Shown: positions 1,279 to 54,925, counted from the stretch's first letter. The stretch is 64,000 nucleotides of DNA from IMGVR_UViG_3300043409_000928:62001-126000, one strand, 5' to 3'. Numbers and translations: made by a program. The notes: generated by a model not told the origin, from the sequence alone.

Positions 1279-1475
1279 CAATTATTCCCCCATCGCAATG
1301 CAGTTATTGCGGCATCATCTCTATTGTTAAAATCAAATATCATATAGTTTTCGTTTAGTTCTGTTTTATACTTGCCACCTGGAAGACCAAATTCTTCTAT
1401 CACCCAGGCACATACATGGTTCCACCACTCTGTGGTATCCTGGCCTATTTTCCAACTTAGTTTGACTTTATACAC
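1278..1475 (-). CDS. Hypothetical protein, 65 aa
   Basis: Overlaps both primase and helicase, suggesting translational coupling. No motif recognised. Confidence 0.6.
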   Translation of the reverse strand: MYKVKLSWKIGQDTTEWWNHVCAWVIEEFGLPGGKYKTELNENYMIFDFNNRDDAAITALRWGNN

Positions 1476-2436
1476 ACCACCGCCTACATAGTAATTTAAT
1501 CTTCAATGGTGAGCTCTCAATCGCCGATAACACACTTTGTAGCACAGCAATCCTTCCAAACTTCTGTGCGGCCTCATTTGCATCTTTAATACCATCTGGC
1601 CATTCTGGAAAACTAACACTCCATCCCAACTCTGCCGCTTGCATTGCAAGTACTAAACCAGCTTTGTCTCTATCAGGCAATACCACTGGCTCATTGTCAA
1701 TGTCTTCAATAATTTTTGCTTGCTCTGGGCTAATTGTGTTGGTCATAATAGCAACACCATCCAGTGTCAATGCATCATACTCGCCTTCAGTTACAATTGT
1801 GTATTTGCGACTATGACTTTGATGATCCAAATTGAATACAAAACTTGGAGGACGACTTGTGACCATCTTTGCAGTTTTCTTGTCCGGTACGTCACCTATC
1901 CAGCGGGCACTATATCCTACAATTTTACCATCACTTATATAAGGTAGTATAACACGATTATCCATGCCTTGTACAGGACTTGCACTAGTGTACCAATCGC
2001 TGAGTTCGATTATGCCTCTGCTGTCTAGATATTCGGCAGCTTCTAAATTTAATTCTCTAACAGTCCATGGCCATTGTATTTCTAGCCAATCTGGCTTTTT
2101 GTAGGCTTCATCTATGACTGTATTGTCTTCTGCAACCTGATCCCATAGTTGTATTTTTAATCTTTGTATTTCACCTTCGTCAATGCCCAGTACTCGCATT
2201 AACTTGATTAGTTTAAAGCCTAATCGCTGACCTGGTCTCCATCCTGTTGTGTAACTGCAATTAAAACAATGATAACCTACACGCTCTTGTTCAAATTTTA
2301 AACCACCACGCTTTTTAGTATCTGGTCTGGATTGGCCATTCTGAATACACATCGGGCAGTTCATTGTCAACCAACCGTTTGATGTTGTTTTTAATGCAGG
2401 TAAGTGCGACCTAAGTGTGTTTTCAACTAGACTCAT
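1468..2436 (-). CDS. gp61: DNA primase, gp61-like
   Basis: Zn ribbon CPMC...HCFNC, TOPRIM motifs VTEGEYD and PDRD, located next to the helicase. Confidence 0.9.
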   Translation of the reverse strand: MSLVENTLRSHLPALKTTSNGWLTMNCPMCIQNGQSRPDTKKRGGLKFEQERVGYHCFNCSYTTGWRPGQRLGFKLIKLMRVLGIDEGEIQRLKIQLWDQVAEDNTVIDEAYKKPDWLEIQWPWTVRELNLEAAEYLDSRGIIELSDWYTSASPVQGMDNRVILPYISDGKIVGYSARWIGDVPDKKTAKMVTSRPPSFVFNLDHQSHSRKYTIVTEGEYDALTLDGVAIMTNTISPEQAKIIEDIDNEPVVLPDRDKAGLVLAMQAAELGWSVSFPEWPDGIKDANEAAQKFGRIAVLQSVLSAIESSPLKIKLLCRRWCV

Positions 2437-3249: not shown

Positions 3250-3295
3250 AACAGTATTTAGCAACGACCGGATCTTTAAAATGCTAAGTAAAGCA

Positions 3296-3673
3296 ATGAT
3301 GGATAGTAAAATCAAAGAATTTTTAGAGCGTTTCCCGTTTATGAGCTTGGTTCGGTACGGCGAAACCGAATTGGTAGGTATTATACAAAATAGTGACCAA
3401 ACAGTGGTCACTATGTATGTCTACAACTTATTAAAAGACGGTGACGATAAAACATTATTCATTGAATGTGGAGAAGAATGGTGGTGGGGCAGTAATAGAC
3501 TAATTCCCATCAACATTGTACTAAAGGCACCCATGCGTACATTCTTGTATGCATTAAAAACATACAGTTCAAAAGATTTTGAAGTTCTGCATGGGAACTT
3601 AACCAGCCTTACCAATGTCATTACTAAACGTACAAAAAGACGTCAAATTAGCCTTATAAGAAAGCTAGATTAA
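3296..3673 (+). CDS. Hypothetical late protein, 125 aa
   Basis: ATG at 3296 (MMDSKIKE) lies 5 nt after TAAGTA. Divergent from the 3249 gene. Confidence 0.65.
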   Translation: MMDSKIKEFLERFPFMSLVRYGETELVGIIQNSDQTVVTMYVYNLLKDGDDKTLFIECGEEWWWGSNRLIPINIVLKAPMRTFLYALKTYSSKDFEVLHGNLTSLTNVITKRTKRRQISLIRKLD

Positions 3674-4539
3674 TTTAAGTTTAAGTAGTCACTGGTACTA
3701 TTGTTATCAACCCACAGGTGCTGTGTATCTTTGTATTTTGCAATACTTCTATCTAACAGATCGACATATTGATTTACCTGGTGATTAGTAATTAATTTAC
3801 CTCTCCAAATAAACAATACTTTCATCCCTTTGGCACTCATGAGACTTCTGTGTTTGGTTCTTAAGTTATTCCAAGCAAATGAATTTGTTTCAGCAAGTTG
3901 TGGTATAGCAATGTACTTGTTTGTGTGTTGCTTAATTGGATCTGTTAACAAGTAAAGAGTTTCGCTGGCATTGTTGTCAAATAATTTAACTCGCATTGAC
4001 AATGGTGCATCAATTAGACTAGTACGGTCGCGATGTGGTATTATATCAGCGGCACTGGACCACATGTTCCATGCAAAATCTTTATCACCTACCCAAGGCA
4101 TGTAGTCGTGTATTTGCTCAAAAATTTCAGGGAATTCGGTGTAGGTTTTCTCCAATGCATTTAAAGACCAAATTGGATTCCATCCTGGCGTTACGCTGTC
4201 TATGCTCCTATAAGTTCGATCTGTTTCCGCAACTGTGGCGCTGGCAAAATCAGCCTGAGCCTTGCTTGCATGTTGTGCATTGTTATTAAAATAAAGAATA
4301 AATTTTTCAATGTCATTGATTTTAATACTAGGAATATTGTATGGAACAAACAAGTACTTGCCATATGTTTGTTCAAGCTTGGAGTGAAGGCCAATGACTT
4401 CGGGTAGTAAGCTCAACTCGTGTTTACGAAGCTTGGTTAAATTTTCCTTGGTCTCGGTTACAGCGCCACCTACTTTACGTTCTACGTTTTGTTCGGTGTA
4501 CACTGTTTGATTATCATTGCTCCTGATCATACTTGTCAA
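3670..4539 (-). CDS. Hypothetical protein, possible cupin/2OG-Fe(II) oxygenase fold
   Basis: 289 aa, ATGA overlap with the mini-DnaE stop. HxD (IIPHRD) and a distal His (WNNLRTKHRS). Confidence 0.5.
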   Translation of the reverse strand: MTSMIRSNDNQTVYTEQNVERKVGGAVTETKENLTKLRKHELSLLPEVIGLHSKLEQTYGKYLFVPYNIPSIKINDIEKFILYFNNNAQHASKAQADFASATVAETDRTYRSIDSVTPGWNPIWSLNALEKTYTEFPEIFEQIHDYMPWVGDKDFAWNMWSSAADIIPHRDRTSLIDAPLSMRVKLFDNNASETLYLLTDPIKQHTNKYIAIPQLAETNSFAWNNLRTKHRSLMSAKGMKVLFIWRGKLITNHQVNQYVDLLDRSIAKYKDTQHLWVDNNSTSDYLNLN

Positions 4540-5120
4540 GTATACCCATAACTGATTTGTTCACAAATTAAATTCATTTGTGCAACAATGGCAACTGCAT
4601 ACGCAGTGGCGTGACTTTTCTTAAAGAAGTATTCATCGTTCTTGGGCTTCGTCCAAACTTCGTTCATAATCGTCGTCCATGGCTTCCCAATCAGATAGCG
4701 TTTCGCGGGACGGATCATTGCTAGGACCGCAGATAATTGTTCCACTGAAGTCGGCTGGGTCCTCCGGAGAATATCGCCATGCCCGTTCAAATGAAATAAC
4801 AGATTTACAAAGTCGTTGTCTTGTAATAGATCCCATAATGGCTCCTGGTTGGCTAGTTGATCCAAATGTTCTTTGCTTTTTACCTTTTGGTACAAGCTTA
4901 CATTCAATAAGTCTACTTTAAAAAATCCTAGTTCTTCTGCTTTTTTATAATCAACATCGCACCATCCGGTAAATGGATTGGCTGGTACTGGATGAAAGTA
5001 CACTCCAGTTTTATGCTTTTGCTGTTGATTATTGGCAATCTGCATTGCTGGCGTGTGTGGCAATAGATTAAGAATTGCTTCTCTATTGGCAAAGTCAATG
5101 TCTACGTCGGGATGATTCAC
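4536..5120 (-). CDS. Miniature DNA polymerase III alpha (DnaE)-like protein, 194 aa
   Basis: DnaE motifs in the correct order: PDVDIDF, KHKTGVYF, FFKVDLLNV, QPTSVEQLSAVLAMIRP, YFFKKSHATAYA. Confidence 0.85.
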   Translation of the reverse strand: MNHPDVDIDFANREAILNLLPHTPAMQIANNQQQKHKTGVYFHPVPANPFTGWCDVDYKKAEELGFFKVDLLNVSLYQKVKSKEHLDQLANQEPLWDLLQDNDFVNLLFHLNGHGDILRRTQPTSVEQLSAVLAMIRPAKRYLIGKPWTTIMNEVWTKPKNDEYFFKKSHATAYAVAIVAQMNLICEQISYGYT

Positions 5121-5320
5121 TTTTTAAGTTTCTCTTTAAACATAGTAGTCAGCTGACTCTGTTGTGTTTTAATTTGATTCATTTCTGCATAGAGCATGTC
5201 AAGCTTTTTTATAAATTCAAGCAATCGCAGTTCTAGAGATTCGTATCTAGCGCCTGCATCATCATTGTGTTGATCCACAGTACTTCGTTCGGTTCTTTTT
5301 TTAATTTCTTTATCCACCAT
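5117..5320 (-). CDS. Small coiled-coil hypothetical protein, start uncertain
   Basis: Fills the gap up to the mini-DnaE (GTGA overlap) but overlaps the upstream gene by 88 bp. Confidence 0.4.
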   Translation of the reverse strand: MVDKEIKKRTERSTVDQHNDDAGARYESLELRLLEFIKKLDMLYAEMNQIKTQQSQLTTMFKEKLKK

Positions 5321-5925
5321 TCAGTTTCCACATGTTTTGCTACCGTATCAATTTGAGCTGGTTCCATTCTATCTAATAGATTCTGTGCCGCTTCAGTGGA
5401 GTAAATGATCCATGGACTTAATCTGCCCATAACTACCATATTCATTCCTGTTGCAGGCGGAATCTTATTAAAGAAATCTCTCCAATTGTTTCCGGTTTTC
5501 TCACCCCACTCGCGCATAGTGAGAATTGTTCTTTCAAGTGCTCTATCTGCCGTTTCTTTTTTTGCGGCTTCCTGAACATACAACTGATAAGTGCCGGGCT
5601 TTTGCCAATCACTTAATTTCACTCCCATTTTAAAAAGCCAGTTAATAAACTTGTCACTTTCGTATGGGCGAAGTTCTATCAAATAGTTAGCAAATTTTAT
5701 AAATGCAATGTAATCAAAACTCCTTATAAAATCATCAACTGTCTTTGTTTTTTTAGCGTTTGGACTAACATAGCTAATAAAGTCTGTCCACACTCTAAAA
5801 CCAATTCTGCTGTCTATGTCATCCTTGTTCATCCACCGCCTTTTCTTTTCACACATGTGGTTACTAAGTGTACTTTCGCGGCTAAAGGACTTTAAACAAA
5901 ATTTACATTGATGTTGTTGTGACAT
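5233..5925 (-). CDS. Hypothetical protein with N-terminal zinc finger
   Basis: CKFCLKSFSRESTLSNHMC fits C-x2-C-x3-F-x5-L-x2-H-x-C. Confidence 0.75.
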   Translation of the reverse strand: MSQQHQCKFCLKSFSRESTLSNHMCEKKRRWMNKDDIDSRIGFRVWTDFISYVSPNAKKTKTVDDFIRSFDYIAFIKFANYLIELRPYESDKFINWLFKMGVKLSDWQKPGTYQLYVQEAAKKETADRALERTILTMREWGEKTGNNWRDFFNKIPPATGMNMVVMGRLSPWIIYSTEAAQNLLDRMEPAQIDTVAKHVETEWWIKKLKKEPNEVLWINTMMMQALDTNL

Positions 5926-6420
5926 TTATTTAAACAATTCTTTAAATTCTTTATTACCCATGTTTTGTGAAGTTGCTATTTCAGCTAATACTTCTGGGCC
6001 ATTTATTTCTCGGAACAGTTCAATTTCATCATTGCTCATTGCTGGAAACTTCTCAATGAGCCATGCTGTTAGCTTGTCTTTCTTTGCACCGCCAATTGGT
6101 GGAATAAATTCATGTCTAAGTTTAACGCCCAGTCCAACCAGTGCCAGGGCCTTCCATCGAAGTTCTTCATGTTCACTTGTGGTGGCAATGTAATCAATGT
6201 TGCTGTAGTTGTTTACATCTATTAGATACTGTTCCTGTACATCTCTAGTACCTTGTACTTGACTGGCCCAACGCTGTGCCATAAAAGTGTTTACCCCTTT
6301 TTTATCCTCATCAGATAACTTTGTGTAATAATCACCTTTACGCAGATCCACTGCCGCCATCAATTGGTCAATGGGAACTTTGTATACAGCAGATGCTGGT
6401 GCTTTCTTTTTGGTAGCCAT
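5926..6420 (-). CDS. Probable clamp-loader small subunit, gp62-like
   Basis: YYTKLSDEDKKGVNTFMAQRWAS resembles the gp62 family. Size and replication-operon context fit. Confidence 0.5.
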   Translation of the reverse strand: MATKKKAPASAVYKVPIDQLMAAVDLRKGDYYTKLSDEDKKGVNTFMAQRWASQVQGTRDVQEQYLIDVNNYSNIDYIATTSEHEELRWKALALVGLGVKLRHEFIPPIGGAKKDKLTAWLIEKFPAMSNDEIELFREINGPEVLAEIATSQNMGNKEFKELFK

Positions 6421-6429
6421 ACTGTTATT

Positions 6430-6936
6430 TTAAAACCAAATCTTGTTTAAGTCAAGCACTTCTGGAATTTTATTTGTTTCTTTTAAAAAGAAAGCACAAA
6501 CTGGTTCTTTTTTATGTTCTAAAGGAACTGCCAACACATGCCCAAACTTTAGCTTGGGCACATACCATTTTACTTCTTGGTAGATGTTGACTATTTCAAC
6601 CTTCATCCATTCGGGCTTGTAGCCGTTGATGGGATTAAAGACAAACGTGCTGAACCCACGGTCATTTAAACTCATTACATTGATAACTTCTGGCTCTCCG
6701 TGATCGGGTTCTCCAATAATCAGTGACCAATCTAATGGCACTTTGAGTTCATGACTTCCTATACGCAATACTGCCGCAGGACAACTGAAGCTTTCTAAGA
6801 AAACAAGTGGTACAAACATATAGTCAACATCAGCAGGATTGCTGTAGTCAAGTACCCCGTAGCGCAAGTCTTCATCAATTTCTTCTGGTAAACGATCTAA
6901 ATCGTATGACAGATTATCAACTGTTAATATTCTCAT
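6430..6936 (-). CDS. Hypothetical protein, possibly a degenerate Hint-like beta fold
   Basis: 168 aa, coupled to uvsW. Fold guess from the hydrophobic pattern only. Confidence 0.6.
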   Translation of the reverse strand: MRILTVDNLSYDLDRLPEEIDEDLRYGVLDYSNPADVDYMFVPLVFLESFSCPAAVLRIGSHELKVPLDWSLIIGEPDHGEPEVINVMSLNDRGFSTFVFNPINGYKPEWMKVEIVNIYQEVKWYVPKLKFGHVLAVPLEHKKEPVCAFFLKETNKIPEVLDLNKIWF

Positions 6937-8390
6937 TTATAAATTACCTTTTCAGTTTGATATGGATAGTTTGCTTCTTCATAAAATTTCTTGCGCTTGG
7001 CCAAGTGTCTTTTGGCAAACTTTGCTGTGCTTGTTATGTCCCATATCTGGACAAAGTCTTTGTCTTCTGCTTTTCTAATACCTCGGCCAATGCTCTGTAT
7101 AACCCTGACAAAACTCTTTCCAGGCTCCACTAGAACCAAGTTAAAGATCCTAGGTATATTAATACCCACAGAGGCCACACCATACGTGGCCACAATGATT
7201 TTATTTGTTGCAAGAGTAACTTCATCATACTCTTCTTTTCTATCCTTTGATTTCATGGACCCTGATACAAATACGCTTTCTGGTAAACGCTCAACCAGCA
7301 TCTTACCCGAAGCAATACGATCGACCAATACCAAAGTATTTCCACTTTGACTAATTGCATCAATGGTCTTGGCCAGTTCATCAATCCTGCGTTCATTGCT
7401 GGTCAGATATGTTAATTCTTCTTGATATGTTTTGTATTCAACTTTATCATCAAATTGCAATACCTTTACATGGCAGTTACTCAATACACCAATGTCCTGT
7501 AGTTCACTGGCCTGTAATCTATGTAGGACATTGCCCAATGATGCTGTTAGACTGATATATTCATGTTCTTCTTTGGGTATGGTACCTGTTAACCCCCAAC
7601 GAATTGGAACATTTGCAAACGGGCCCGTCAACATTGTTTTAAGTACATCAGCCTTGGCCATGTGTACTTCGTCAACAATTACTGCAATCAGGTCATCCGT
7701 AATTGCTTCAATGCCAATTGCACTGGTTCCTTCTTTGCTTCGTTTGATTAAGGAGTTGATACTTTGCCATGTTGCAATGGTATGTGTATGCCCAAGATCT
7801 TTCTCGTCACCAAAGTATACACCAACATCTAATCCCATGTTGACATAGTCTGCATGTGTCTGCCGCACTAGATCCTTGTTGGGTACAATAACAACTGTGC
7901 GGCCATACGGTTCACACGTAAGACTCATGGCCGCTGTCATTAATGTCTTGCCAGCACCTGTTGCAATCTCTTGAACACCATGCGGATTAGCAAGGAAGCG
8001 ATTGATACACTCTACTTGGTAATCGCGAATCTTAATAGGCTGGCCTTCTGCTACGTGTCCTTTGGGCCAAAGTATGTGACTAAAGGTGTCCTCGGTAACT
8101 TCAGCAAAATTGAAATTGTGCGCGGTCCGCTTGTCTTCAATTTCAATTTGCCAACCTTCCTCATCTATAATGGGCAATACTCGTTCTAATAGATTTAGAT
8201 AGGTCGACCCTGCGGTGGTAAAGAAGCTGATCTTACCATCCCATCTTCCTAGCCTAAAGGCCGGCACATGATAAGCATATGGTAATTGATATTTTAGTTT
8301 GGCTTCGCATCGTCTGCGTGTTGAAGCATCTAAGTCGTGAAACTTGACATTTACTTCATCTTTGATTTCTAATCGGCATATTCCAGGCAT
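6933..8390 (-). CDS. uvsW: UvsW-like SF2 DNA helicase
   Basis: IRDYQ, ATGAGKT, DEVH, LTGT, QSIGRGIR. Confidence 0.92.
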   Translation of the reverse strand: MPGICRLEIKDEVNVKFHDLDASTRRRCEAKLKYQLPYAYHVPAFRLGRWDGKISFFTTAGSTYLNLLERVLPIIDEEGWQIEIEDKRTAHNFNFAEVTEDTFSHILWPKGHVAEGQPIKIRDYQVECINRFLANPHGVQEIATGAGKTLMTAAMSLTCEPYGRTVVIVPNKDLVRQTHADYVNMGLDVGVYFGDEKDLGHTHTIATWQSINSLIKRSKEGTSAIGIEAITDDLIAVIVDEVHMAKADVLKTMLTGPFANVPIRWGLTGTIPKEEHEYISLTASLGNVLHRLQASELQDIGVLSNCHVKVLQFDDKVEYKTYQEELTYLTSNERRIDELAKTIDAISQSGNTLVLVDRIASGKMLVERLPESVFVSGSMKSKDRKEEYDEVTLATNKIIVATYGVASVGINIPRIFNLVLVEPGKSFVRVIQSIGRGIRKAEDKDFVQIWDITSTAKFAKRHLAKRKKFYEEANYPYQTEKVIYK

Positions 8391-12838: not shown

Positions 12839-13297
12839 TCAATTATTTTGTTTTGCCATTTGTGAAAGGTATTCTTCATTGTGAATCCATTTATTCTTTA
12901 CCAAGAAACCCCATTCTCTTTGCTTTGGTCCAGGCACGAACAATGACCAACATGTAATATCTGGGTCAAGCTCGATGCGATGATAAGACCTACTGCTACA
13001 GATTCTAAAGTGACCAGGTTTTCTCCAATGGGCTAATTCGCCAAACTTGTTGCCGTGTTTATCAAATTGAGGAATCCATTCATAGTATCCGCCTTTTAGA
13101 ATCAATGTAAAATACGGCCACGGATGATCATGCACATCATCTGGATCACTTTTGCAAAACTTGTGTACAAAGATGTTGAACGGAAACCATGTACGATCTT
13201 TAAGAAACACATAGTAGCGTTCCAACAACGGTTCACTGCTTCGACGATCTAAAATAATTCTGTGTCGTCCAAGTCTTTGCATTAGTTTTTTAATCAT
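12839..13297 (-). CDS. Cupin-like metal-binding protein
   Basis: HKF...HDHPW...HRIEL pattern. Confidence 0.7.
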   Translation of the reverse strand: MIKKLMQRLGRHRIILDRRSSEPLLERYYVFLKDRTWFPFNIFVHKFCKSDPDDVHDHPWPYFTLILKGGYYEWIPQFDKHGNKFGELAHWRKPGHFRICSSRSYHRIELDPDITCWSLFVPGPKQREWGFLVKNKWIHNEEYLSQMAKQNN

Positions 13298-15060: not shown

Positions 15061-16038
15061 TTAAGCTGAACGACTACGAATCATCTTTAGGATGTCATCG
15101 ACGCTGGGCTTTGCGGCTCCAGCAGGTGCGGCCACTGCGGTTGTTACTGTCGGAGCAGGCGCGGCCACTGCGGCAGGCTTGCTTGCTACTACTGGAGTGT
15201 CTTCATCAGCGTCAGCAACTGCCCCTGCTGTAGAAGCAGATGCGGTAAGTTGAACACCACTTGGACGATAAAACTTGCTCCACTTTTCTGGATCATACAA
15301 CTGACCATCAACACTGGCTTCAAACATTTCCATGATAGCACGAACTTCGTCTACACCTGGACGCTTGGGCATAAAGTCGTTCAAGTTGAACAGGCCGTGT
15401 GTTGCAATTGCTTGCAATTCCACTTCGTTCAAGCCACGCTCTTTACGTGCCCAACCTGATGTTGAGTAGTCAGCATAGCCACCCTTTTGCGTCTTGTTCA
15501 AACGGAAGTCTGTGCCACGCATGTAGTCTGTTGGCAATTCTTCCATGTCAGGATCCATTAAGGCCTGTTTGATCAAGGTAAAGATCTGTGGGCTGATGAT
15601 GAAACGGCGCACTGGATTTTCTGGAACACTTGATTCTTCCATTGGGCTGTTGACAACAAAACCTTGGAAAACATAACTGCGTTTCTTCCAATATTTGCGT
15701 CCAAGTGTTTCCATGTTGGGATCTTTGAACCAAGGACGGATTGTTGCGTGAACTGGACATGTTTCGTTCCACATTTCAACGCAAGGTACTTGAACAATAA
15801 CTTTCTTGTTTTCGTCTTGTCCCTTGACTCCCGGGAACTCAATACGAATCATTTGACGCTCACGCCAAAAGAATGTATTTGTGTCATCTCCATCTGGGAG
15901 AAAACGCATTGATGCGGATGTGCCTTCGGGGATATTCCAGTGTGCGTAAATTGCGTTATCACCGGTGCTGGTATTAGAACCACCAGACTTTTGTGCTTGC
16001 TCGGCTAGGCGAGCGCGGATTTCTGCTAAAGTTGCCAT
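15061..16038 (-). CDS. gp32: Single-stranded DNA-binding protein, gp32-like
   Basis: [37 protein letters not shown], flexible C-terminal tail. Confidence 0.88.
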
Positions 16039-16066
16039 GATAAATTTCCTTTATGTATTAGCCAAT

Positions 16067-16090
16067 AATAGTGTCAGACCCTATTGGGTC
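16067..16090 (-). promoter_or_regulatory. Candidate H-type pseudoknot in the gp32 leader
   Basis: GACC-C-AAUAG-GGUC-UGACA-CUAUU. Confidence 0.5.
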
Positions 16091-16127
16091 AAACAACACA
16101 CGCTTCAATTGTTTGGGCATGTGTTGT

Positions 16128-16157
16128 ATTATACTTATGATTGCAGTCAAAGAGCAA
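16128..16157 (-). promoter_or_regulatory. sigma70-type promoter of gp32
   Basis: TTGCTC-18-TATAAT. Confidence 0.55.
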
Positions 16158-16215
16158 TAGCCAAATCAATCTATTTTTGTCATTTTGGGCAAATGCGTTT
16201 AAATTGGTGTTTTGG

Positions 16216-16221
16216 TAAATA
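16216..16221 (+). promoter_or_regulatory. Late promoter TAAATA of the fibre gene
   Basis: Followed by a leader with SD AAGGA before ATG 16259. Confidence 0.7.
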
Positions 16222-16258
16222 TCTCAAAGCCACGACCCTGGCAAAAAGGAAAAATACA

Positions 16259-19200
16259 ATGTCAACTCGTAAAATTAATACCATCAAGGTAAACGATGTA
16301 ACACCAACCGACCACTTGGGACGGTTAGGTGAAATCACCTACAGAGACGGATACTTGTACTACCACGATGGTGTCACCCCAGGTGGTGAACTAATCAGTG
16401 GTGGCAGTGGTGGCGGAGGCGGACCTACAAGCTGGAGTAGCGTTACAGGCAAGCCCAGCTTTGCCACTGTTGCTACAAGCGGATCTTATGCTGACTTAAC
16501 TGGCAAACCAAGTATCCCAAGTAAAGTAAGCGACTTAACAAACGACAGTGGGTTTATTACCAGTGTTGCCTGGACGGATGTCTCTGACAAGCCAGCATTG
16601 TTCTCAGGTGCCTACACAGACTTAACTGGAAAACCAGCATTGTTCAGTGGCGACTACGATGACTTGACCAACAAGCCAACATTGACCACGGGACCTGCTG
16701 GTAATGATGGCGCCGCAGGCGCACAGGGACCACAAGGCGAACCAGGAGCCGCAGGCGCACAGGGACCTGCTGGTAATGATGGCGCCGCAGGCGCACAGGG
16801 ACCACAAGGCGAACCAGGAGCCGCAGGCGCACAGGGACCTGCTGGTAATGATGGCGCAGCCGGAGATCCAGGAGTAGGTGTACCGACAGGTGGTACAGTA
16901 GGACAAGTTCTTGCTAAAATAGACAGCACTGATTATAGCACAGAGTGGGTAACACCCGCTAGCGGCAGTGGCCCAACAAACGAAATTACTAACACAAGTC
17001 CAGAAGGCTCTATATATTCTGTTAGCGTAGGTACTGATGGTGTTGTTACTATGACAACTGCTCGTGGTGGCATTGAGTTCGGTGCCATGCCAGAAGTTGG
17101 CGGACCTTCACACTTCCACATCATGCGTCCAGCGGGACAAAATTCGTCAACTGATTTGTACTTTGGTGATGACTACAACTATGTTAAGATGCCAGGACTT
17201 TATGGATCAAATCCAACTACACAACAAGGTGTTGAAATTGGTTCCAGCATCAACGAAGGCACAGTCAGCGTTTGGAAGTTTGGCACAGATGGTACTACCA
17301 CATTCCCAACGCTAACAGTACCTATCAGCGACAATGCTAATCCAAGTGGCACTGGGCAAACTATAAAGTTCAGCGACTCCTCACAGCAGGCCATCATATT
17401 TGGACCAGCATCAACATCAGAAACTAATTCCGCTCAACGTATTATTATACAAGGTGCACCTGGATATACGGGAACTGGTGGCGAAGGTGGCGATGTTTAC
17501 TTGTGGGCTGGACCGGGCGGTGACACAGATGGTAATGGCGGTGATATCAAAGTCCGTGGTGGCTATGGCAATGGCACTGGTGGCGGTGGATACCTAAACT
17601 TCCAAGCAGGCGATAGTGCCACTGGTCAGGGCGGATACATCAATATTGAAAGCGGGGAATCTGGAACCCAGGGCCAGGGTGGTGATATTGATATTCGGGC
17701 TCGTAGTGGTGGAGACATTGATATCCGTGCTGATGGTGGCGGTGAAATAACACTACTCACACAGTCAGTAGGTGGAAATGAACACAATTGGCAGTTTGGC
17801 AACAGTGGTTCATTAACATTGCCTGGTGGTGGTATAATCACAGATAGTGTTCAAACTGTGACCATAAGTGGTGCTGGAACCTCAGAGGTGAATCAAACAT
17901 ACAACATAGTCTCCAATGGAGTGTATGTTGGGCAAACTGATAGTGCTTACCAAATTGACTACCCGGAGGCACCGTCTACCACATACAAACTACGCATCAA
18001 CACTGATGCCGGAGGGTTTTATGAATCTGAGGATCTTATCACCTGGACTATTGTGGCCGGTGCAGGTGGTGGTACAACACCTGTCCCTACTGGTGTCATA
18101 GTTCCTCAACGCATCACGGTCACTGTTGACTCAAGCAGTTGGAAGTTTGGCGCAGATGGTGATCTAGTATTACCCGCAGGCAAAACAATTAGAGACACAA
18201 GTGGCATAGATTTATTGGCCGACGACACAACATTATTAGAACCATACAAGGGCTTTAGAGCGCACTATGGTACCATGTACAATGGCACGGATGATGAAAA
18301 CGGTCCCATCAACAAACTGGTAATTTACAAATCCACAGCGTCACCTAGCAGTGCCATTGACACCAGCACTGAAAGTGATGACTTTCGAGTAACAGGCTTG
18401 ACCGGCAGTGATGTTGTGGCCATGTTGGTTGTTGTCAGTGATGGCACTGATTTTGAAATACAAACTCCCACTGCAACACTAAAGACATTTGTAGAAAAGA
18501 TCATTGATGAAGTTATCTTAGACGAAGGAGTCGAAGGTGATGTAAACACCGTGTCAGCAATGAGAACAGCATTCTACGCTAACTTCAGTAACTTTAACAC
18601 AGTGATTCCCAATGTAAAAGTTGACCTTGCGTTCTTCACTGTCAATAATCAGTTCAACATCAGTCCTCTATTTACTACAGGAGAAGGTGCAACATTTAGC
18701 GGCATAAGCTATAACATGGTCAACGACACGCTGGACTTGGGTAATTGGGGTCAATCAAATCCAGGTACACACGAAGTAGGTGACGTATATGTGATTCTTG
18801 GTAATACAATTCAAGATGCCAACAGTAATTTTCTTTTAACACCAGACAACGATGTTACTGTAACAATTACTGGTGTTAGTGGCGGCGCAATTCAAACTTA
18901 TACTGTAACAGGTACATTGCCTAGACCAGCAGAAATATGGCCAAGCACAAGTATCAGTGACGGTGGCGATGATGAATACGATGGTGCTAATGCTATTCAC
19001 ACCAACTTGGCCACAGAAATTAGTTACCGTGGCGGTGATGTTTACATTGAAGCAGATGAGTTTAACAGCAACGGCGAATCCACTTATGTTGTAACTTATC
19101 AAGCAGGTATTTTTGGTATATTTGCCACAGGCTGTGACATCAGCACTATAGGCACCAGCGGGGAGGGCGGCTATGGCAACGACAGCAGTAGTAGTGGATT

Positions 19201-20953
19201 TGACGGTGATGGCATTGCTGTCACTGGTAGCTTATATGGCGACAGCGAAAACGCAGTCGACATTGGTGACTTTGTGTTTACTAATTCCACACTTACTGCC
19301 ACAGGCAACGGTGGCGACATGTTCATCAAAGCAGGGGACGATCTGTGGCTGGATGCACTACAAGATGATGTTCATATTCGTGCCAGCGGTGATGTTAGAA
19401 TCAAAGTTGGCTATGATTTTGCCGAGGATACAGCACAATCTGAGTGGCAATTTGACACCGCTGGTTACATCTACTTTCCAGACGGTAGCCAACAAGGAAC
19501 TGCTTATACTGGTGACTATGATGATTTAACTAACAAACCAACTATACCAACCAGCTTCAGTAGTTTAGTCAACGGTTCTTTCACTGCAAGCCTTGGCACA
19601 GACGGCGTACTAACACTACCCGAAGGTGGCACTATAGATAACACACCAACAATCGTTACTGTTACAGTAGACCAGTTAACTTCTATCACAGCCTGGACTG
19701 GAACTTTGGTTTTTACTAGAGTCAGTGACATTTTATATCAAGTATTACCAAGTGGACCAACTATGGAACTGGTTGTCGATACTTGGAGACTGAGGTTTCA
19801 AACTGGTACATGGTACGAATCAACAGACCTTATAAATTGGGGAAATGTTGCCGGTTCATCACCTGCACCGGTTGGTACTCTGGAGATATTGGAGACAATG
19901 AACCTAACAGTGGATAGTAATGAATGGATCTTAGATAATAATGGCACATTAACATTGCCCTCAGGTGGCACTATCTCGGAAGGCGGTGGATTTACTGGTG
20001 CTATTCGACTAACGCCTGCAGGTGGCTCCAACGAATATCAAGCATTGGTAATTTATCCAACTGGCACAGGAGATGGTGATCACATACACTTGACCGCAGG
20101 TGGTGGCACCACTGAACTGTATCTTGGCAGTGACAGCCACTTTGTCAAGTTGGCAAATGATGGCGCTGTAGTAATACAGGCCAATGATGGCGTATCTAGT
20201 AATCAACAATGGCTGTTTGACACAGCTGGTAAACTACAACTACCAGCAGGTGGTGATATTGTTGACAGCACGGGCACAACAGTATTAGGTAGTGGAACTA
20301 CATTGCCCGCAAATGCCAGTGGTTATTTGGTCAACGATGGTGCTGGTGCGTTGTCCTGGGCCGCGGGTGATGGCACATTCAGTGGCGCTTACGCAGATCT
20401 AACTGGCAAGCCAACATTGTTTGATGGTGCATACAGTAGTTTAACTGGCACACCAGCATTGTTCTCAGGTGTTTATGCTGACTTGACTAGCAAGCCAACA
20501 TTGTTTGATGGCGACTACAATAGTTTAACCAACAAGCCAACCATCAGAATAGCTGTGGCAACTGGCAGTGGTCCTGGTGGCAACTTGCAAGCAGATTCAC
20601 TGGCCTTGGCTGGTCTTAACCCCACCGAAAACATACCATCAACTTGGGGTGGCGACCTAATACTTCAAGGTGGTGTAGGTGGCGCCAATGGTGACTTGTA
20701 TGGTGAAGTTAGAATCAAAAGCGGTACAATTGGTGCAAATTATGAATGGCACTTTACTACTGATAAGAAAATTAAATTACCAGCAGGTGGCGACATTGTC
20801 AACAGCACTGGTACCAGTGTAATGGGTGGTAGTGGTAGTTATGCTCCAGCAAATGCCGGTAACTGGGCAGGTACTGCTCCTACTACAATAGCCGAAGCAT
20901 TGGATCGAATAGCTGCCAAGCTTGCGTCTTCGGGTAGTGCTAACATGCCTTAA
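16259..20953 (+). CDS. Large mosaic tail fibre/adhesin with collagen-like segment, 1564 aa
   Basis: Start reassigned to MSTRKIN. G-X-Y repeats, FSGxYxDLTxKP repeats, repeated WxFxxxGxLxLPxGGxI motif, G/T/S-rich. Confidence 0.8.
16691..16857 (+). repeat. 72-bp perfect tandem repeat (2 copies plus 23 bp) encoding collagen triplets
   Basis: Units begin at 16691, 16763 and 16835. Confidence 0.9.
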
Positions 20954-53251: not shown

Positions 53252-54925
53252 TTAAGCTGGAGGAGATGCAGCCGGTGTTGGGCTTGCAGAAGCGCCAGTA
53301 TCAGCTGTATCTGTGGCAACATCAGGAGCGGCACCTAGATCACCTATGCCACCTGACAGGTCTAAGTCACCTTCTGAAGGACCTTTTAATCCAGTTGCAC
53401 CAAAGTCTGCACCTTCTTCATTTGGTTGACTTTCCCCGGCATTTTCTTCTCTCCAGGCTTTTTCGTTTTCTAAGATTTCATCATCTGTCAGTCCTAAGAA
53501 TTTCTGTAGTTTGAAGCGATGTGCTAGATACGGAATTTCTGCTAGCTGTGTGAATACTGCGGCACGGGCATTGTTAATTTCAATTTCTCTGTAGCCACTG
53601 AAGTTTTGCGGCTCAAGCATGTCAATATCAAAACTCGAGCTATCAATATTAACACCACGCTGTTTTAAGAATATTTTAAATTCTTTATCTAAATACGGAG
53701 CAACTAAACCTTGTAATCGTCTGCAATATCGATTGAATCGAAATTCCTGAATTAATGCTGTACCCATACGTCCGTCTGTAAACTGTACAGCAGTATCATC
53801 TGGGCCAGTTGGCAAATAACTACTTGGAATACGCAGACCACGCAGTAACTTATTAGTAAAAAACTTCAAGTCGTCAATTTCACCCAGCCCTTGCCCACCG
53901 GGCAATACTTCAACTTTTGATCCACGACCATCGGCTGTTTGTGCAAAGAAGAAATCTTCCATGATACTCAATGGATTATAACTAGCATCCATTTGTGTAC
54001 TACCACCAGAACGAGTTGGAATACGGCGTTGATGTATTTCGTTTTTAACACGCTCAACGAAAGCCATGGCCTGGTGACTTGGTAAATTGCCTGTATCAAT
54101 ATAGAATACTCTGCGTTCTGGAGCTCGCTGTACACGATAGATGATAATAGCATCTTCAAGTAATTCTTTTTGCTTGTAAATTTTAAATACACTATCTAAA
54201 ATACTTGCACCAAACGGCCAGCTAGCATCTAACCCTTCATTTAATGTGATATGTATAACATGCTCACCATCAACAGCAATTTCACCACCCTGTGCTCCAG
54301 GTTTACCGTAATTACTGCCTTGACTATATACCCCTGGCGTGTTAGGTGCCGCGGCACCTGTTAATGTCTGTACATTATCAATAGGTTGTGTTGCAACTTT
54401 ATTTGCAAAGTTAGGGTGTACATTGGCAATAACATATTGTTCAACTGCGCGACCTTCGGCTTCATTGATAACTGCTCGTTTCACATCTGCTGAGTTAACC
54501 CAGTACAGTTCAAATGTTTCTGGATCACGCAAGAAGAAATGATCACCATACTTGATTGCATTTCTAAATGTACGGAATATACGCTGATCCATTTTATTAA
54601 TGGCACACCACTTTTTCAATGATGCAGTAACAATCTTACTTTCACTTTCTGTTGGTTCTTCTTTCCACATCACACGGAATGGTAAATTTGTATCTGGTTC
54701 TGATTGTGTGCAAAATTCAGCAATGGTGTCCAGTGCGGCATTGATCTCGCTGTCTTGGTCCATTTGATCGTATTGAACATATCGTTCAACTCTGTTTGGT
54801 TGTCCAGTGTATACATCTTGTAACCAAGATGCAAATTTTGCAGAAGATCCTTGAACAGCTTGACGGCCATTACTTTTTAGTTCACCTTCTGGTTCCCAAA
54901 TTTTAAAATGTTTTCTCCAACTCAT
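53252..54925 (-). CDS. gp20: Portal protein, gp20-like
   Basis: EDAIIIYRVQRAPERRVFYIDTG, EDFFFAQ, LPGGQ, LRIPSS. ATG lies 5 nt after TAAGTA. Confidence 0.95.
   Translation of the reverse strand: MSWRKHFKIWEPEGELKSNGRQAVQGSSAKFASWLQDVYTGQPNRVERYVQYDQMDQDSEINAALDTIAEFCTQSEPDTNLPFRVMWKEEPTESESKIVTASLKKWCAINKMDQRIFRTFRNAIKYGDHFFLRDPETFELYWVNSADVKRAVINEAEGRAVEQYVIANVHPNFANKVATQPIDNVQTLTGAAAPNTPGVYSQGSNYGKPGAQGGEIAVDGEHVIHITLNEGLDASWPFGASILDSVFKIYKQKELLEDAIIIYRVQRAPERRVFYIDTGNLPSHQAMAFVERVKNEIHQRRIPTRSGGSTQMDASYNPLSIMEDFFFAQTADGRGSKVEVLPGGQGLGEIDDLKFFTNKLLRGLRIPSSYLPTGPDDTAVQFTDGRMGTALIQEFRFNRYCRRLQGLVAPYLDKEFKIFLKQRGVNIDSSSFDIDMLEPQNFSGYREIEINNARAAVFTQLAEIPYLAHRFKLQKFLGLTDDEILENEKAWREENAGESQPNEEGADFGATGLKGPSEGDLDLSGGIGDLGAAPDVATDTADTGASASPTPAASPPA

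What the first reader, a model, noticed from the sequence alone, without database searches (positions are those of the whole stretch)
4536..5120. 194-aa C-family polymerase keeping all three catalytic aspartates
Seen: PDVDIDF, HKTGVYF, KVDLL, QPTSVEQLSAVLAMIRP and FKKSHATAYA occur in DnaE order within 194 aa, with clean start and stop overlaps on both sides, so it does not look like a broken fragment. Known: E. coli DnaE (about 1160 aa) uses D401/D403 (PDFDVDF) and D555 (KFDFLGL) and needs PHP, thumb, fingers and OB domains, which are absent or collapsed here. Inference: a minimal Pol-beta-like nucleotidyltransferase with a specialised role such as primer extension or hand-off, end-tailing or base modification, perhaps completed in trans by the co-transcribed Zn-finger and gp62-like proteins. 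Similar small proteins may already be noted in jumbo-phage surveys, which I cannot check.
Basis: partly seen in the sequence, partly recalled or inferred. Interest (0 to 1): 0.8.

Follow-up and report, generated by a model that had tools for sequence, protein, structure and literature searches.

The report
Half of a split mini-DnaE polymerase
This 194-residue phage gene is real and conserved, but it is the metal-binding half of a two-piece miniature DnaE-type polymerase already described in Rak2-like jumbo phages, not a complete polymerase.

Summary
The ORF exists, on the minus strand (4536-5120, GTG start). It has 4-nt overlaps at both ends. It carries the DnaE motifs in DnaE order, and all three catalytic Asp are at least 95% conserved in 65 homologues. 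It matches phrog_11778 (E 3e-63) and about 7,500 metagenomic proteins of about 195 aa. Its AlphaFold model hits only Pol III alpha structures.

It is not a self-contained polymerase. It begins exactly at the DxD strand (E. coli residue 398) and lacks the GRGS nucleotide-binding motif. In relatives (Slickus01, RaK2, PA5oct, Atu_ph07) that motif sits on a separate protein of about 170 aa. This protein aligns to E. coli DnaE 320-392 and is encoded 11-182 kb away. Each half is found in 96 phage records with near-identical organism make-up. Three rare metagenomic proteins (375-376 aa) fuse the two halves.

Iyer et al. 2021 (PMC7824862) already described this as a split minimal Pol III alpha of group 2.2 jumbo phages.

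The N-terminal half is not in this window, and I could not reach it elsewhere in this genome. No biochemistry exists. Verdict: a real but ordinary member of a known, uncharacterised family.

The parts
4536..5120 (-). C-terminal unit (194 aa) of the split minimal DnaE-type (Pol III alpha) polymerase. It comprises the metal-binding palm strands plus a reduced fingers remnant.
   Evidence: phrog_11778 E 2.9e-63; 7,554 homologues, the 120 listed 167-199 aa; collinear blocks with E. coli DnaE 398-767; AlphaFold pLDDT 87.3, and the 13 best Foldseek hits are all Pol III alpha.
5094..5108 (-). DxDxD strand (D5, D7, D9), matching E. coli D401, D403 and D405.
   Evidence: At least 95% conserved in 65 homologues; aligned to PDFDVDF 400-406.
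4998..5015 (-). HKTGVY strand (H36, G39 and Y41 conserved). By eye it corresponds to E. coli HAGGV 511-515; only about 14 residues stand where the thumb (about 78 residues) lies in E. coli.
   Evidence: Conservation. HAGGV position. The pairing of the two motifs is my inference from their order, not an aligned block.
4911..4919 (-). K68-V-D70, matching E. coli K553 and D555 (third catalytic Asp).
   Evidence: K68 and D70 invariant in 26 sequences and in 27 sequences; aligned to KFDFLG 553-558.
4701..4712 (-). R137-P138-A-K140 fingers motif, matching E. coli FRPGP 638-642.
   Evidence: Invariant I136, R137, P138 and K140; aligned block 96-139 to 597-641.
4596..4625 (-). FKKSHATAYA fingers helix, matching E. 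coli FNKSHSAAYA from 756.
   Evidence: F166, K167, K168, H170 and Y174 conserved; block 163-177 to 753-767.
5117..5320 (-). Small upstream ORF (67 aa as listed) whose TGA overlaps the GTG start (GTGA). Context only; function unknown.
   Evidence: A 53-aa gene is called at the same place in relative UFOVP71.
5233..5925 (-). Conserved neighbour: 230-aa phage-specific protein with an N-terminal C2H2-type zinc finger. Not shown to be part of the enzyme.
   Evidence: phrog_11058 E 2.9e-58; weak zf-C2H2; homologues in PA5oct, Atu_ph07 and RaK2 at the same position; ESM atlas shows viral-only clusters.
5926..6420 (-).
   Evidence: Homologues PA5oct gp218 E 3e-18, Atu_ph07 gp78 and RaK2 ORF121; no Pfam hit.
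6430..6936 (-). Conserved neighbour of 168 aa, function unknown.
   Evidence: phrog_11279 E 9e-50; PA5oct gp217 E 5e-55; GAF-like only by language-model features, which is a lead and not a finding.
6933..8390 (-). UvsW-type DEAD/ResIII helicase that heads the conserved block.
   Evidence: Pfam ResIII, DEAD and Helicase_C; phrog_16; same position in RaK2 (uvsW) and UFOVP71. The 'DNA helicase' at the head of the Phosso locus is named UvsW-type only by position.
3281..3673 (+). Conserved antisense 130-aa ORF lying one gene downstream of the C-unit here (the 289-aa ORF 3670-4539 lies between); in PA5oct, Atu_ph07 and RaK2 its homologue directly follows the C-unit.
   Evidence: Homologues PA5oct gp221 E 2e-38, Atu_ph07 gp73 and RaK2 ORF125w, all antisense there too.
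1468..2436 (-). gp61-type DNA primase that closes the conserved block.
   Evidence: phrog_47 E 5e-28 and Toprim_2; same position in RaK2, PA5oct and Phosso.

Best explanation
The ORF is the C-terminal unit of the phage-specific split minimal DNA polymerase III alpha (DnaE-type, family C) of Rak2-like, group 2.2 jumbo phages. It supplies the two beta-strands that carry the three metal-binding Asp (D5, D7, D70), the neighbouring Lys (K68), and a cut-down fingers element (RPxK and FKKSH motifs).

It starts exactly at the DxD strand. It therefore lacks the preceding helix-loop with the GRGS motif, which in Pol-beta-fold nucleotidyltransferases holds the triphosphate of the incoming nucleotide. That part is on a separate protein of about 160-183 aa (the N-unit), encoded elsewhere in the genome, usually beside a GroES-like gene and the gp44 clamp loader.

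The most likely mechanism is that the two polypeptides associate to rebuild one palm active site. The complex would then act as a small, thumb-less and clamp-less, hence probably distributive, accessory DNA polymerase. It would work in a T4-like replisome whose main enzyme is a family B polymerase.

Shown: identity, conservation, fold, the split in relatives, co-occurrence, and a natural fusion. Inferred: heterodimer formation, polymerase activity and role, and that this genome carries the N-unit outside the window.
For: Family identity:
- phrog_11778 E 2.9e-63 and full-length-DnaE phrog_405 E 7e-7.
- Collinear blocks with E. coli and M. tuberculosis DnaE.
- AlphaFold pLDDT 87.3, with the top 13 Foldseek hits all Pol III alpha at probability up to 1.00.
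- Catalytic residues conserved.

The partner half:
- N-unit found in Slickus01, PA5oct, Atu_ph07 and RaK2 with an invariant GxGRGS.
- Its profile aligns to E. coli DnaE 320-392, E 3e-5, abutting the C-unit's start at 398.
- The N-unit model's 15 best Foldseek hits are DnaE, about 3 A over about 100 columns.

Co-occurrence:
- 96 phage records for each half, with near-identical organism counts.
- 7,554 C-unit versus at least 8,000 N-unit metagenomic proteins; nearly all N-units are flagged PF07733.
- The halves are never adjacent in 188 N loci and 91 C loci.
- Fusion proteins P0328, P0391 and P0392 read N-unit, about 7-aa linker, C-unit.

Prior description: PMC7824862; the N-unit was noted as 'truncated' Pol III alpha in CBB (PMC5259590) and as Pol III alpha in Atu_ph07 (PMC6102473).

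Conserved replication neighbourhood, UvsW to primase.
Against: The N-unit was not found in the window: motif regex, tblastn, and an HMM of 86 N-units with best E 0.43. It could not be retrieved from the rest of this genome's contig. It was also absent from about 105 kb downstream of the C-unit in the closest long relative, UFOVP71, so its presence in this genome is assumed, not shown.

No biochemical, genetic or structural data exist for either half in the library searched. Sequence-only similarity of the C-unit to solved DnaE chains is weak (E 0.02-0.04). Foldseek TM-scores are only 0.40-0.46. The fused form rests on three short metagenomic contigs.
Confidence: 0.8

Rival explanations
1. One reading: the 194-aa protein is a self-sufficient minimal Pol-beta-like nucleotidyltransferase. 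It would do primer extension, tailing or base modification, perhaps helped by the adjacent Zn-finger and 164-aa proteins.
For: All three Asp and K68 are conserved. The gene is intact and translationally coupled to its neighbours. The upstream block is conserved across distant relatives.
Against: There is no GS or nucleotide-binding element in the ORF; it starts at the DxD strand. The missing element is on a dedicated partner that co-occurs and is fused to it in a rare lineage. The neighbours have no DnaE or nucleotidyltransferase similarity.
Confidence: 0.06
2. The N+C complex is catalytically active but is not a template-copying DNA polymerase. It could be a template-independent nucleotidyltransferase, a primer-processing or hand-off enzyme, or a maker of a nucleotide signal used against host defence.
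For: It has lost the thumb, most of the fingers, the clamp-binding region and OB, all of which serve processive templated synthesis. The phages already have a family B polymerase. The Pol-beta fold is used by many non-polymerase transferases (established knowledge).
Against: The retained non-palm motifs (RPxK, FKKSHxxAY) are DnaE fingers elements and are invariant. Both halves sit in replication gene modules: primase/helicase for one and clamp loader for the other.
Confidence: 0.12
3. It is a non-catalytic relic retained as a structural or regulatory replisome subunit.
For: The reduction is extreme. No activity has ever been shown.
Against: Catalytic Asp, Lys and GRGS are near-invariant across homologues down to 24-35% identity in both halves. 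Pseudo-enzymes usually lose such residues.
Confidence: 0.02

Closest known systems
Split minimal DNA polymerase III alpha of group 2.2 (Rak2-like) jumbo phages, C-terminal unit (Iyer et al. 2021, PMC7824862; PHROG phrog_11778; e.g. RaK2 YP_007007279.1, PA5oct QCG76101.1, Phosso XYS97594.1)
   Same: Same length, same start at the DxD strand, same conserved residues, and the same UvsW-to-primase neighbourhood. 33-52% identity to cultured members.
   Different: Nothing of substance. This copy is from an uncultured freshwater or lake phage. Its genome has an extra 289-aa ORF between the C-unit and the antisense gene.
Bacterial DnaE / Pol III alpha (E. coli NP_414726.1, 1160 aa; PDB 2HNH, 5LEW, 2HPI)
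   Same: Pol-beta-fold palm with DxD plus a third Asp, the K553 equivalent, and the FRPGP and FNKSH fingers motifs in the same order.
   Different: There is no PHP, thumb, clamp-binding, OB or tau-binding part. About 390 DnaE residues are compressed into 194. The GS-motif half of the palm is on another polypeptide.
Full-length DnaE-like polymerases of phages (e.g. Streptomyces, Cellulophaga and Bacillus phage G types; group 3.2 of Iyer et al.)
   Same: The N-unit hits their palm region directly by tblastn, E about 1e-5 to 1e-6.
   Different: Those are single-chain enzymes of about 1,000 aa or more that resemble host enzymes and serve as the main replicase (PMC7824862).
Fused minimal form (P0328, P0391, P0392; 375-376 aa, metagenomic)
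   Same: Contains a complete C-unit (E about 1e-54) of the same family.
   Different: The N-unit is joined to it by a linker of about 7 residues in one polypeptide. It is known only from three short contigs.

Membership tests
Split minimal Pol III alpha, C-terminal unit (phrog_11778) | Standalone protein of about 190 aa matching the family profile end to end | tested here: met
   phrog_11778 E 2.9e-63, aa 4-188 on profile positions 7-194 of 197; the 120 listed of 7,554 homologues are 167-199 aa.
Split minimal Pol III alpha, C-terminal unit (phrog_11778) | Begins at the DxD strand, with DxD, the third Asp and the fingers motifs conserved | tested here: met
Split minimal Pol III alpha, C-terminal unit (phrog_11778) | Lies in a T4-like (group 2.2) jumbo-phage genome between a UvsW helicase and the primase | tested here: met
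   Window annotation; synteny with RaK2, PA5oct, Atu_ph07, Phosso and UFOVP71; source contig of 285,304 bp.
Split minimal Pol III alpha, C-terminal unit (phrog_11778) | A separate N-terminal (GRGS) unit encoded in the same genome | tested here: inconclusive
   Absent from the 64-kb window. The rest of the contig could not be read. Present in every cultured relative examined.
Split minimal Pol III alpha, C-terminal unit (phrog_11778) | Accompanied by a family B (gp43-type) polymerase | tested here: inconclusive
   None of the ORFs scanned against PHROGs (almost all those of at least 120 aa up to 57.9 kb) is a polymerase. The last 6 kb, including ORFs of 312, 592, 340 and 227 aa, was not scanned. 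Present in relatives: Slickus01 (two adjacent CDS named DNA polymerase), CBB and Atu_ph07.
Family C replicative polymerase (DnaE / PolC) | Pol-beta-fold palm with three catalytic carboxylates | tested here: met
   D5, D7 and D70 align to D401, D403 and D555 and are conserved; fold match.
Family C replicative polymerase (DnaE / PolC) | GS (GRGS) nucleotide-binding motif in the same chain | tested here: not met
   The ORF starts after it. The window's only GRGS lies in the portal ORF 53252-54925.
Family C replicative polymerase (DnaE / PolC) | PHP domain, thumb, complete fingers, clamp-binding motif and OB fold | tested here: not met
   No Pfam hit except a sub-threshold finger match. The 194 aa span E. 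coli 398-767 with the thumb and about 110 fingers residues missing, and the protein ends there. tblastn of E. coli DnaE on the window finds no other piece.
Family C replicative polymerase (DnaE / PolC) | Template-directed DNA synthesis | not testable with these tools
   No experimental report was found.

The most novel reading that the evidence does not exclude
Cutting the active site into two polypeptides is functional, not accidental. One half is encoded with the helicase/primase genes and the other with the clamp-loader genes. An active polymerase would therefore form only where primosome and clamp loader meet, that is at a fresh primer. That would make it an assembly-gated primer-extension or hand-off enzyme for the family B replicase. 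The rare fused form would then be a constitutive variant.
Probability: 0.1. Interest if true: 0.7.

Novelty: new member of a known kind. Interest (0 to 1): 0.3.

Why it matters
On its own this gene adds one more uncultured freshwater example to a family published in 2021, and many GenBank and JGI records already label such proteins 'DNA polymerase III alpha'.

The family itself remains interesting. At about 375 residues in two chains it is the smallest known DnaE-type catalytic core. It is very abundant in lake metagenomes (about 7,500 clusters at 90% identity). It coexists with a family B replicase, and nobody has shown what it does.

Two points from this check may help whoever tests it. First, the split falls precisely between E. 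coli DnaE residues 392 and 398. Second, a natural single-chain fusion exists that could serve as a ready-made construct.

Tried and rejected
Searches for the N-unit in this genome (the window is IMG/VR contig IMGVR_UViG_3300043409_000928, positions 62001-126000):
- Four scans with N-unit queries and one with a neighbouring clamp-loader gene never returned that contig.
- Ranking loci by tetranucleotide similarity to pick a close relative did not discriminate well enough.

Search in the closest long relative:
- I walked 105 kb downstream of the C-unit in UFOVP71 (LR797824.1; C-unit P0054, 81% identical) with eleven exact-protein look-ups. I found only accessory genes and no N-unit.
- Matching 'longest contig' lengths between the C-unit and N-unit hit lists gave no shared contig.

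Other dead ends:
- Megablast of 6 kb against cultured phages found nothing.

Rejected readings:
- A broken DnaE pseudogene: rejected on conserved length, conserved start and gene coupling.
- Other DnaE pieces hidden in the neighbouring ORFs: rejected.

Full report
OBSERVATION

The stated coordinates hold a 194-codon ORF, but on the minus strand; the plus-strand translation is riddled with stops.
- The start is GTG at 5120-5118 and overlaps the TGA of the upstream ORF (GTGA). An in-frame TAA lies two codons upstream, so the ORF cannot be longer.
- The TGA stop overlaps a TTG of the next ORF, with an ATG three codons further on.
- In the E. coli K-12 dnaE product fetched here, PDFDVDF is at 400-406 and KFDFLG at 553-558.

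IS IT MORE THAN CHANCE?

Yes.
- The protein matches PHROG phrog_11778 ('DNA polymerase', profile length 197) end to end at E 2.9e-63. It also matches a full-length DnaE PHROG (phrog_405) at E 7e-7.
- Pfam gives only a sub-threshold finger-domain match.
- In the 5.8-billion-protein collection it has 7,554 homologues; the 120 listed are 167-199 aa, and JGI names many of them 'DNA polymerase III alpha subunit'.
- Among clusters at 50% identity, 526 representatives match the family profile.
- In 65 unique homologues of 35-99% identity the following are at least 95% conserved: D5, D7, D9, R13, H36, G39, Y41, K68, D70, N73, R137, P138, K140, F166, K167, K168, H170, Y174 and A175.

RELATION TO DnaE

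A profile of the family aligns collinearly with E. coli DnaE in four blocks:
- aa 2-22 to residues 398-420
- aa 53-74 to residues 538-559
- aa 96-139 to residues 597-641
- aa 163-177 to residues 753-767

The same order is seen against M. tuberculosis DnaE1. About 390 DnaE residues are thus covered by 194. The thumb region, between 420 and about 511, is reduced to some 14 residues. About 110 residues of the fingers, between 641 and 753, are reduced to about 23. The protein ends shortly after the FNKSH helix, so nothing corresponds to the clamp-binding, OB or tau-binding parts, nor to the PHP domain.

In Foldseek against the PDB, the 13 best hits are all bacterial Pol III alpha. The best E is 4.6e-4, probability is up to 1.00, and TM normalised to the query is 0.33-0.46 (0.40-0.46 for the best eight). 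Everything below those hits is noise.

IT IS A HALF, NOT A WHOLE

The ORF begins exactly at the strand with the DxD motif. It lacks the preceding segment that in DnaE carries GRGS (E. coli 361-364). By established knowledge of Pol-beta-fold transferases, and from Lamers et al. 2006 as cited in PMC7824862, that motif is the nucleotide-binding 'GS' motif.

Searching the 141.6-kb relative Alishewanella phage Slickus01 for that motif turned up a 170-aa protein, WGH49842.1. It ends '...VWGVGRGSSCASLVFYVLGINDINPLTYNIKFAELSKEM' and lies 11 kb from that phage's C-unit.

Its counterparts are:
- PA5oct QCG76169.1
- Atu_ph07 ASV44743.1
- RaK2 YP_007007317.1

All are 169-177 aa with an invariant GxGRGS.

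A profile of 19 such N-units aligns to E. coli DnaE 320-392 at E 3e-5. It therefore stops six residues before the point where the C-unit begins. Nearly all N-units in the big protein collection carry a precomputed Pfam PF07733 (DNA_pol3_alpha) hit. An AlphaFold model of one N-unit (pLDDT 84.4) has DnaE as its 15 best Foldseek hits, at about 3 A over about 100 columns.

THE TWO HALVES GO TOGETHER

- tblastn finds the C-unit in 96 cultured-phage records and the N-unit in 96, with near-identical organism counts. For C and N respectively: Escherichia 34 and 33, Pseudomonas 11 and 11, Klebsiella 11 and 10, Erwinia 8 and 8, Salmonella 8 and 8, Xanthomonas 4 and 4, Yersinia 4 and 4. The list of C-unit records includes two records under 100 kb, a Klebsiella and an Escherichia phage, which may explain part of the gap.
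- The genes are 11 kb (Slickus01), 31 kb (121Q), 33 kb (RaK2), 43 kb (PA5oct), 116 kb (SCTP-2) and 182 kb (Atu_ph07) apart.
- In 188 N loci and 91 C loci with 3-6 kb flanks they are never neighbours.
- The C-unit always sits in a block running UvsW helicase, three conserved small proteins, C-unit, antisense ORF, virion protein, primase.
- The N-unit usually sits just upstream of a GroES-like gene and the gp44 clamp loader.

A search without a length filter found one 375-aa protein with the C-unit in its second half. It and two relatives of 78-81% identity, from other sources, contain three parts in sequence. These are a complete N-unit (aa 14-180, E about 1e-36), a linker of about 7 residues, and a complete C-unit (aa 188-372, E about 1e-54). 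Such a fusion is the classic sign that two separate proteins work as one.

PRIOR KNOWLEDGE

Iyer et al. 2021 (Viruses 13:63, PMC7824862) describe exactly this. [quoted passage not shown] They place it in group 2.2 jumbo phages, next to a family B polymerase.
- The N-unit had been noticed earlier as a 'truncated' Pol III alpha in phage CBB (172 aa; PMC5259590) and as Pol III alpha in Atu_ph07 (PMC6102473). Both papers also report a DnaQ-like epsilon protein.
- I found no experimental work on either half.
- I did not find the fused form mentioned in the papers searched.

THIS GENOME

The window is positions 62001-126000 of IMG/VR contig IMGVR_UViG_3300043409_000928 (285,304 bp). The offset is exactly 62,000, and the only difference is the GTG start read as V. 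The DNA occurs in freshwater and lake metagenomes.

The scanned part of the window (ORFs up to 57.9 kb) is a T4-like mix of replication, recombination and structural genes, with no polymerase and no N-unit. The ORFs in the last 6 kb were checked for the N-unit but not scanned against PHROGs.
- Replication and recombination: primase, UvsW, RNA ligase, UvsY, UvsX, gp32.
- Structural: terminase, sheath, tube, portal, protease, major head protein, tape measure, fibres.

I could not reach the N-unit elsewhere in the contig. It is also not within 105 kb downstream of the C-unit in the syntenic relative UFOVP71. Its presence in this genome is therefore inferred from the strict co-occurrence in relatives.

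Short contigs from four lake metatranscriptome libraries lie on the C-unit ORF with 0-3 mismatches. This is compatible with transcription, but DNA carry-over is not excluded.

MECHANISM

Shown:
- family identity, fold and conserved catalytic residues
- the split at DnaE 392/398, co-occurrence and the fusion

Inferred:
- the two chains assemble into one palm, with the N-unit holding the nucleotide's triphosphate and the C-unit holding the two metals and part of the template and nucleotide pocket
- without thumb, clamp-binding motif and OB fold the enzyme is probably distributive
- it serves beside the family B replicase, in lagging-strand or primer extension, gap filling or repair, as Iyer et al. 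also suggest

Alternatives are an autonomous enzyme, a non-templated transferase, or an inactive relic. They are weighed in the rival explanations; none is favoured by the data.

VERDICT

The feature is a new, ordinary member of a published but biochemically untouched family.

Noticed in passing
P0328 (= L370:1066-2193), P0391, P0392: Three metagenomic proteins of 375-376 aa, 78-81% identical to each other, from ENA and Logan sources. Each is a natural single-chain fusion of the N-unit and the C-unit with a linker of about 7 residues. I did not find this fused form mentioned in the papers searched.
   Followed up: partly
window 5233-6936 (-) and 3281-3673 (+): Three small proteins upstream (168 aa; 164 aa; 230 aa with a C2H2-type zinc finger) and one antisense 130-aa ORF one gene downstream of the C-unit. 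They keep their relative order in PA5oct, Atu_ph07 and RaK2 and have no known function. The 168-aa protein looks GAF-like only by language-model features.
   Followed up: partly
window 3670-4539 (-): A 289-aa ORF whose start overlaps the C-unit's stop. It is present in the close relative UFOVP71 (287 aa), but no homologue was found among the genes flanking the C-unit in RaK2, PA5oct, Atu_ph07 or Slickus01. It has no family match except a faint PHROG hit.
   Followed up: no
window 15965-20953 (+): A 1,662-aa ORF with collagen-like or tail-fibre repeat matches. It lies on the strand opposite to its neighbours on both sides and overlaps the start of the gp32-like gene (15061-16038) by about 70 nt as listed.
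   Followed up: no
window 12839-13297 (-): A 152-aa protein matching a PHROG annotated as cysteine dioxygenase (E 3e-33), sitting between the UvsY-like gene and the UvsX-like gene (a 127-aa ORF also lies in that interval).
   Followed up: no
window 4536-5120 and flanks; runs X16-X19: Short contigs from four lake metatranscriptome libraries match the C-unit ORF and the upstream genes with 0-5 mismatches. Direction is unknown and DNA carry-over is not excluded.
   Followed up: partly
L278-L285 (UFOVP71 LR797824.1, about 95-172 kb, and a related Logan contig): The closest long relative carries a large accessory region with unusual genes: release-factor (PCRF/RF-1) fragments, ribosomal protein S21, ClpP, ClpS, HSP20, NifU and Fe-S assembly proteins, at least three radical-SAM genes, a carbamoyltransferase, and SSF and TctC transport proteins.
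   Followed up: no
L004:2558-5196 (Slickus01): Two adjacent genes (567 aa and 311 aa) are both annotated 'DNA polymerase' in the 141.6-kb relative. Read together with the T4 gp43-type pair reported in Atu_ph07 (gp276, gp277), this looks like a split family B replicase, but I did not test it.
   Followed up: no
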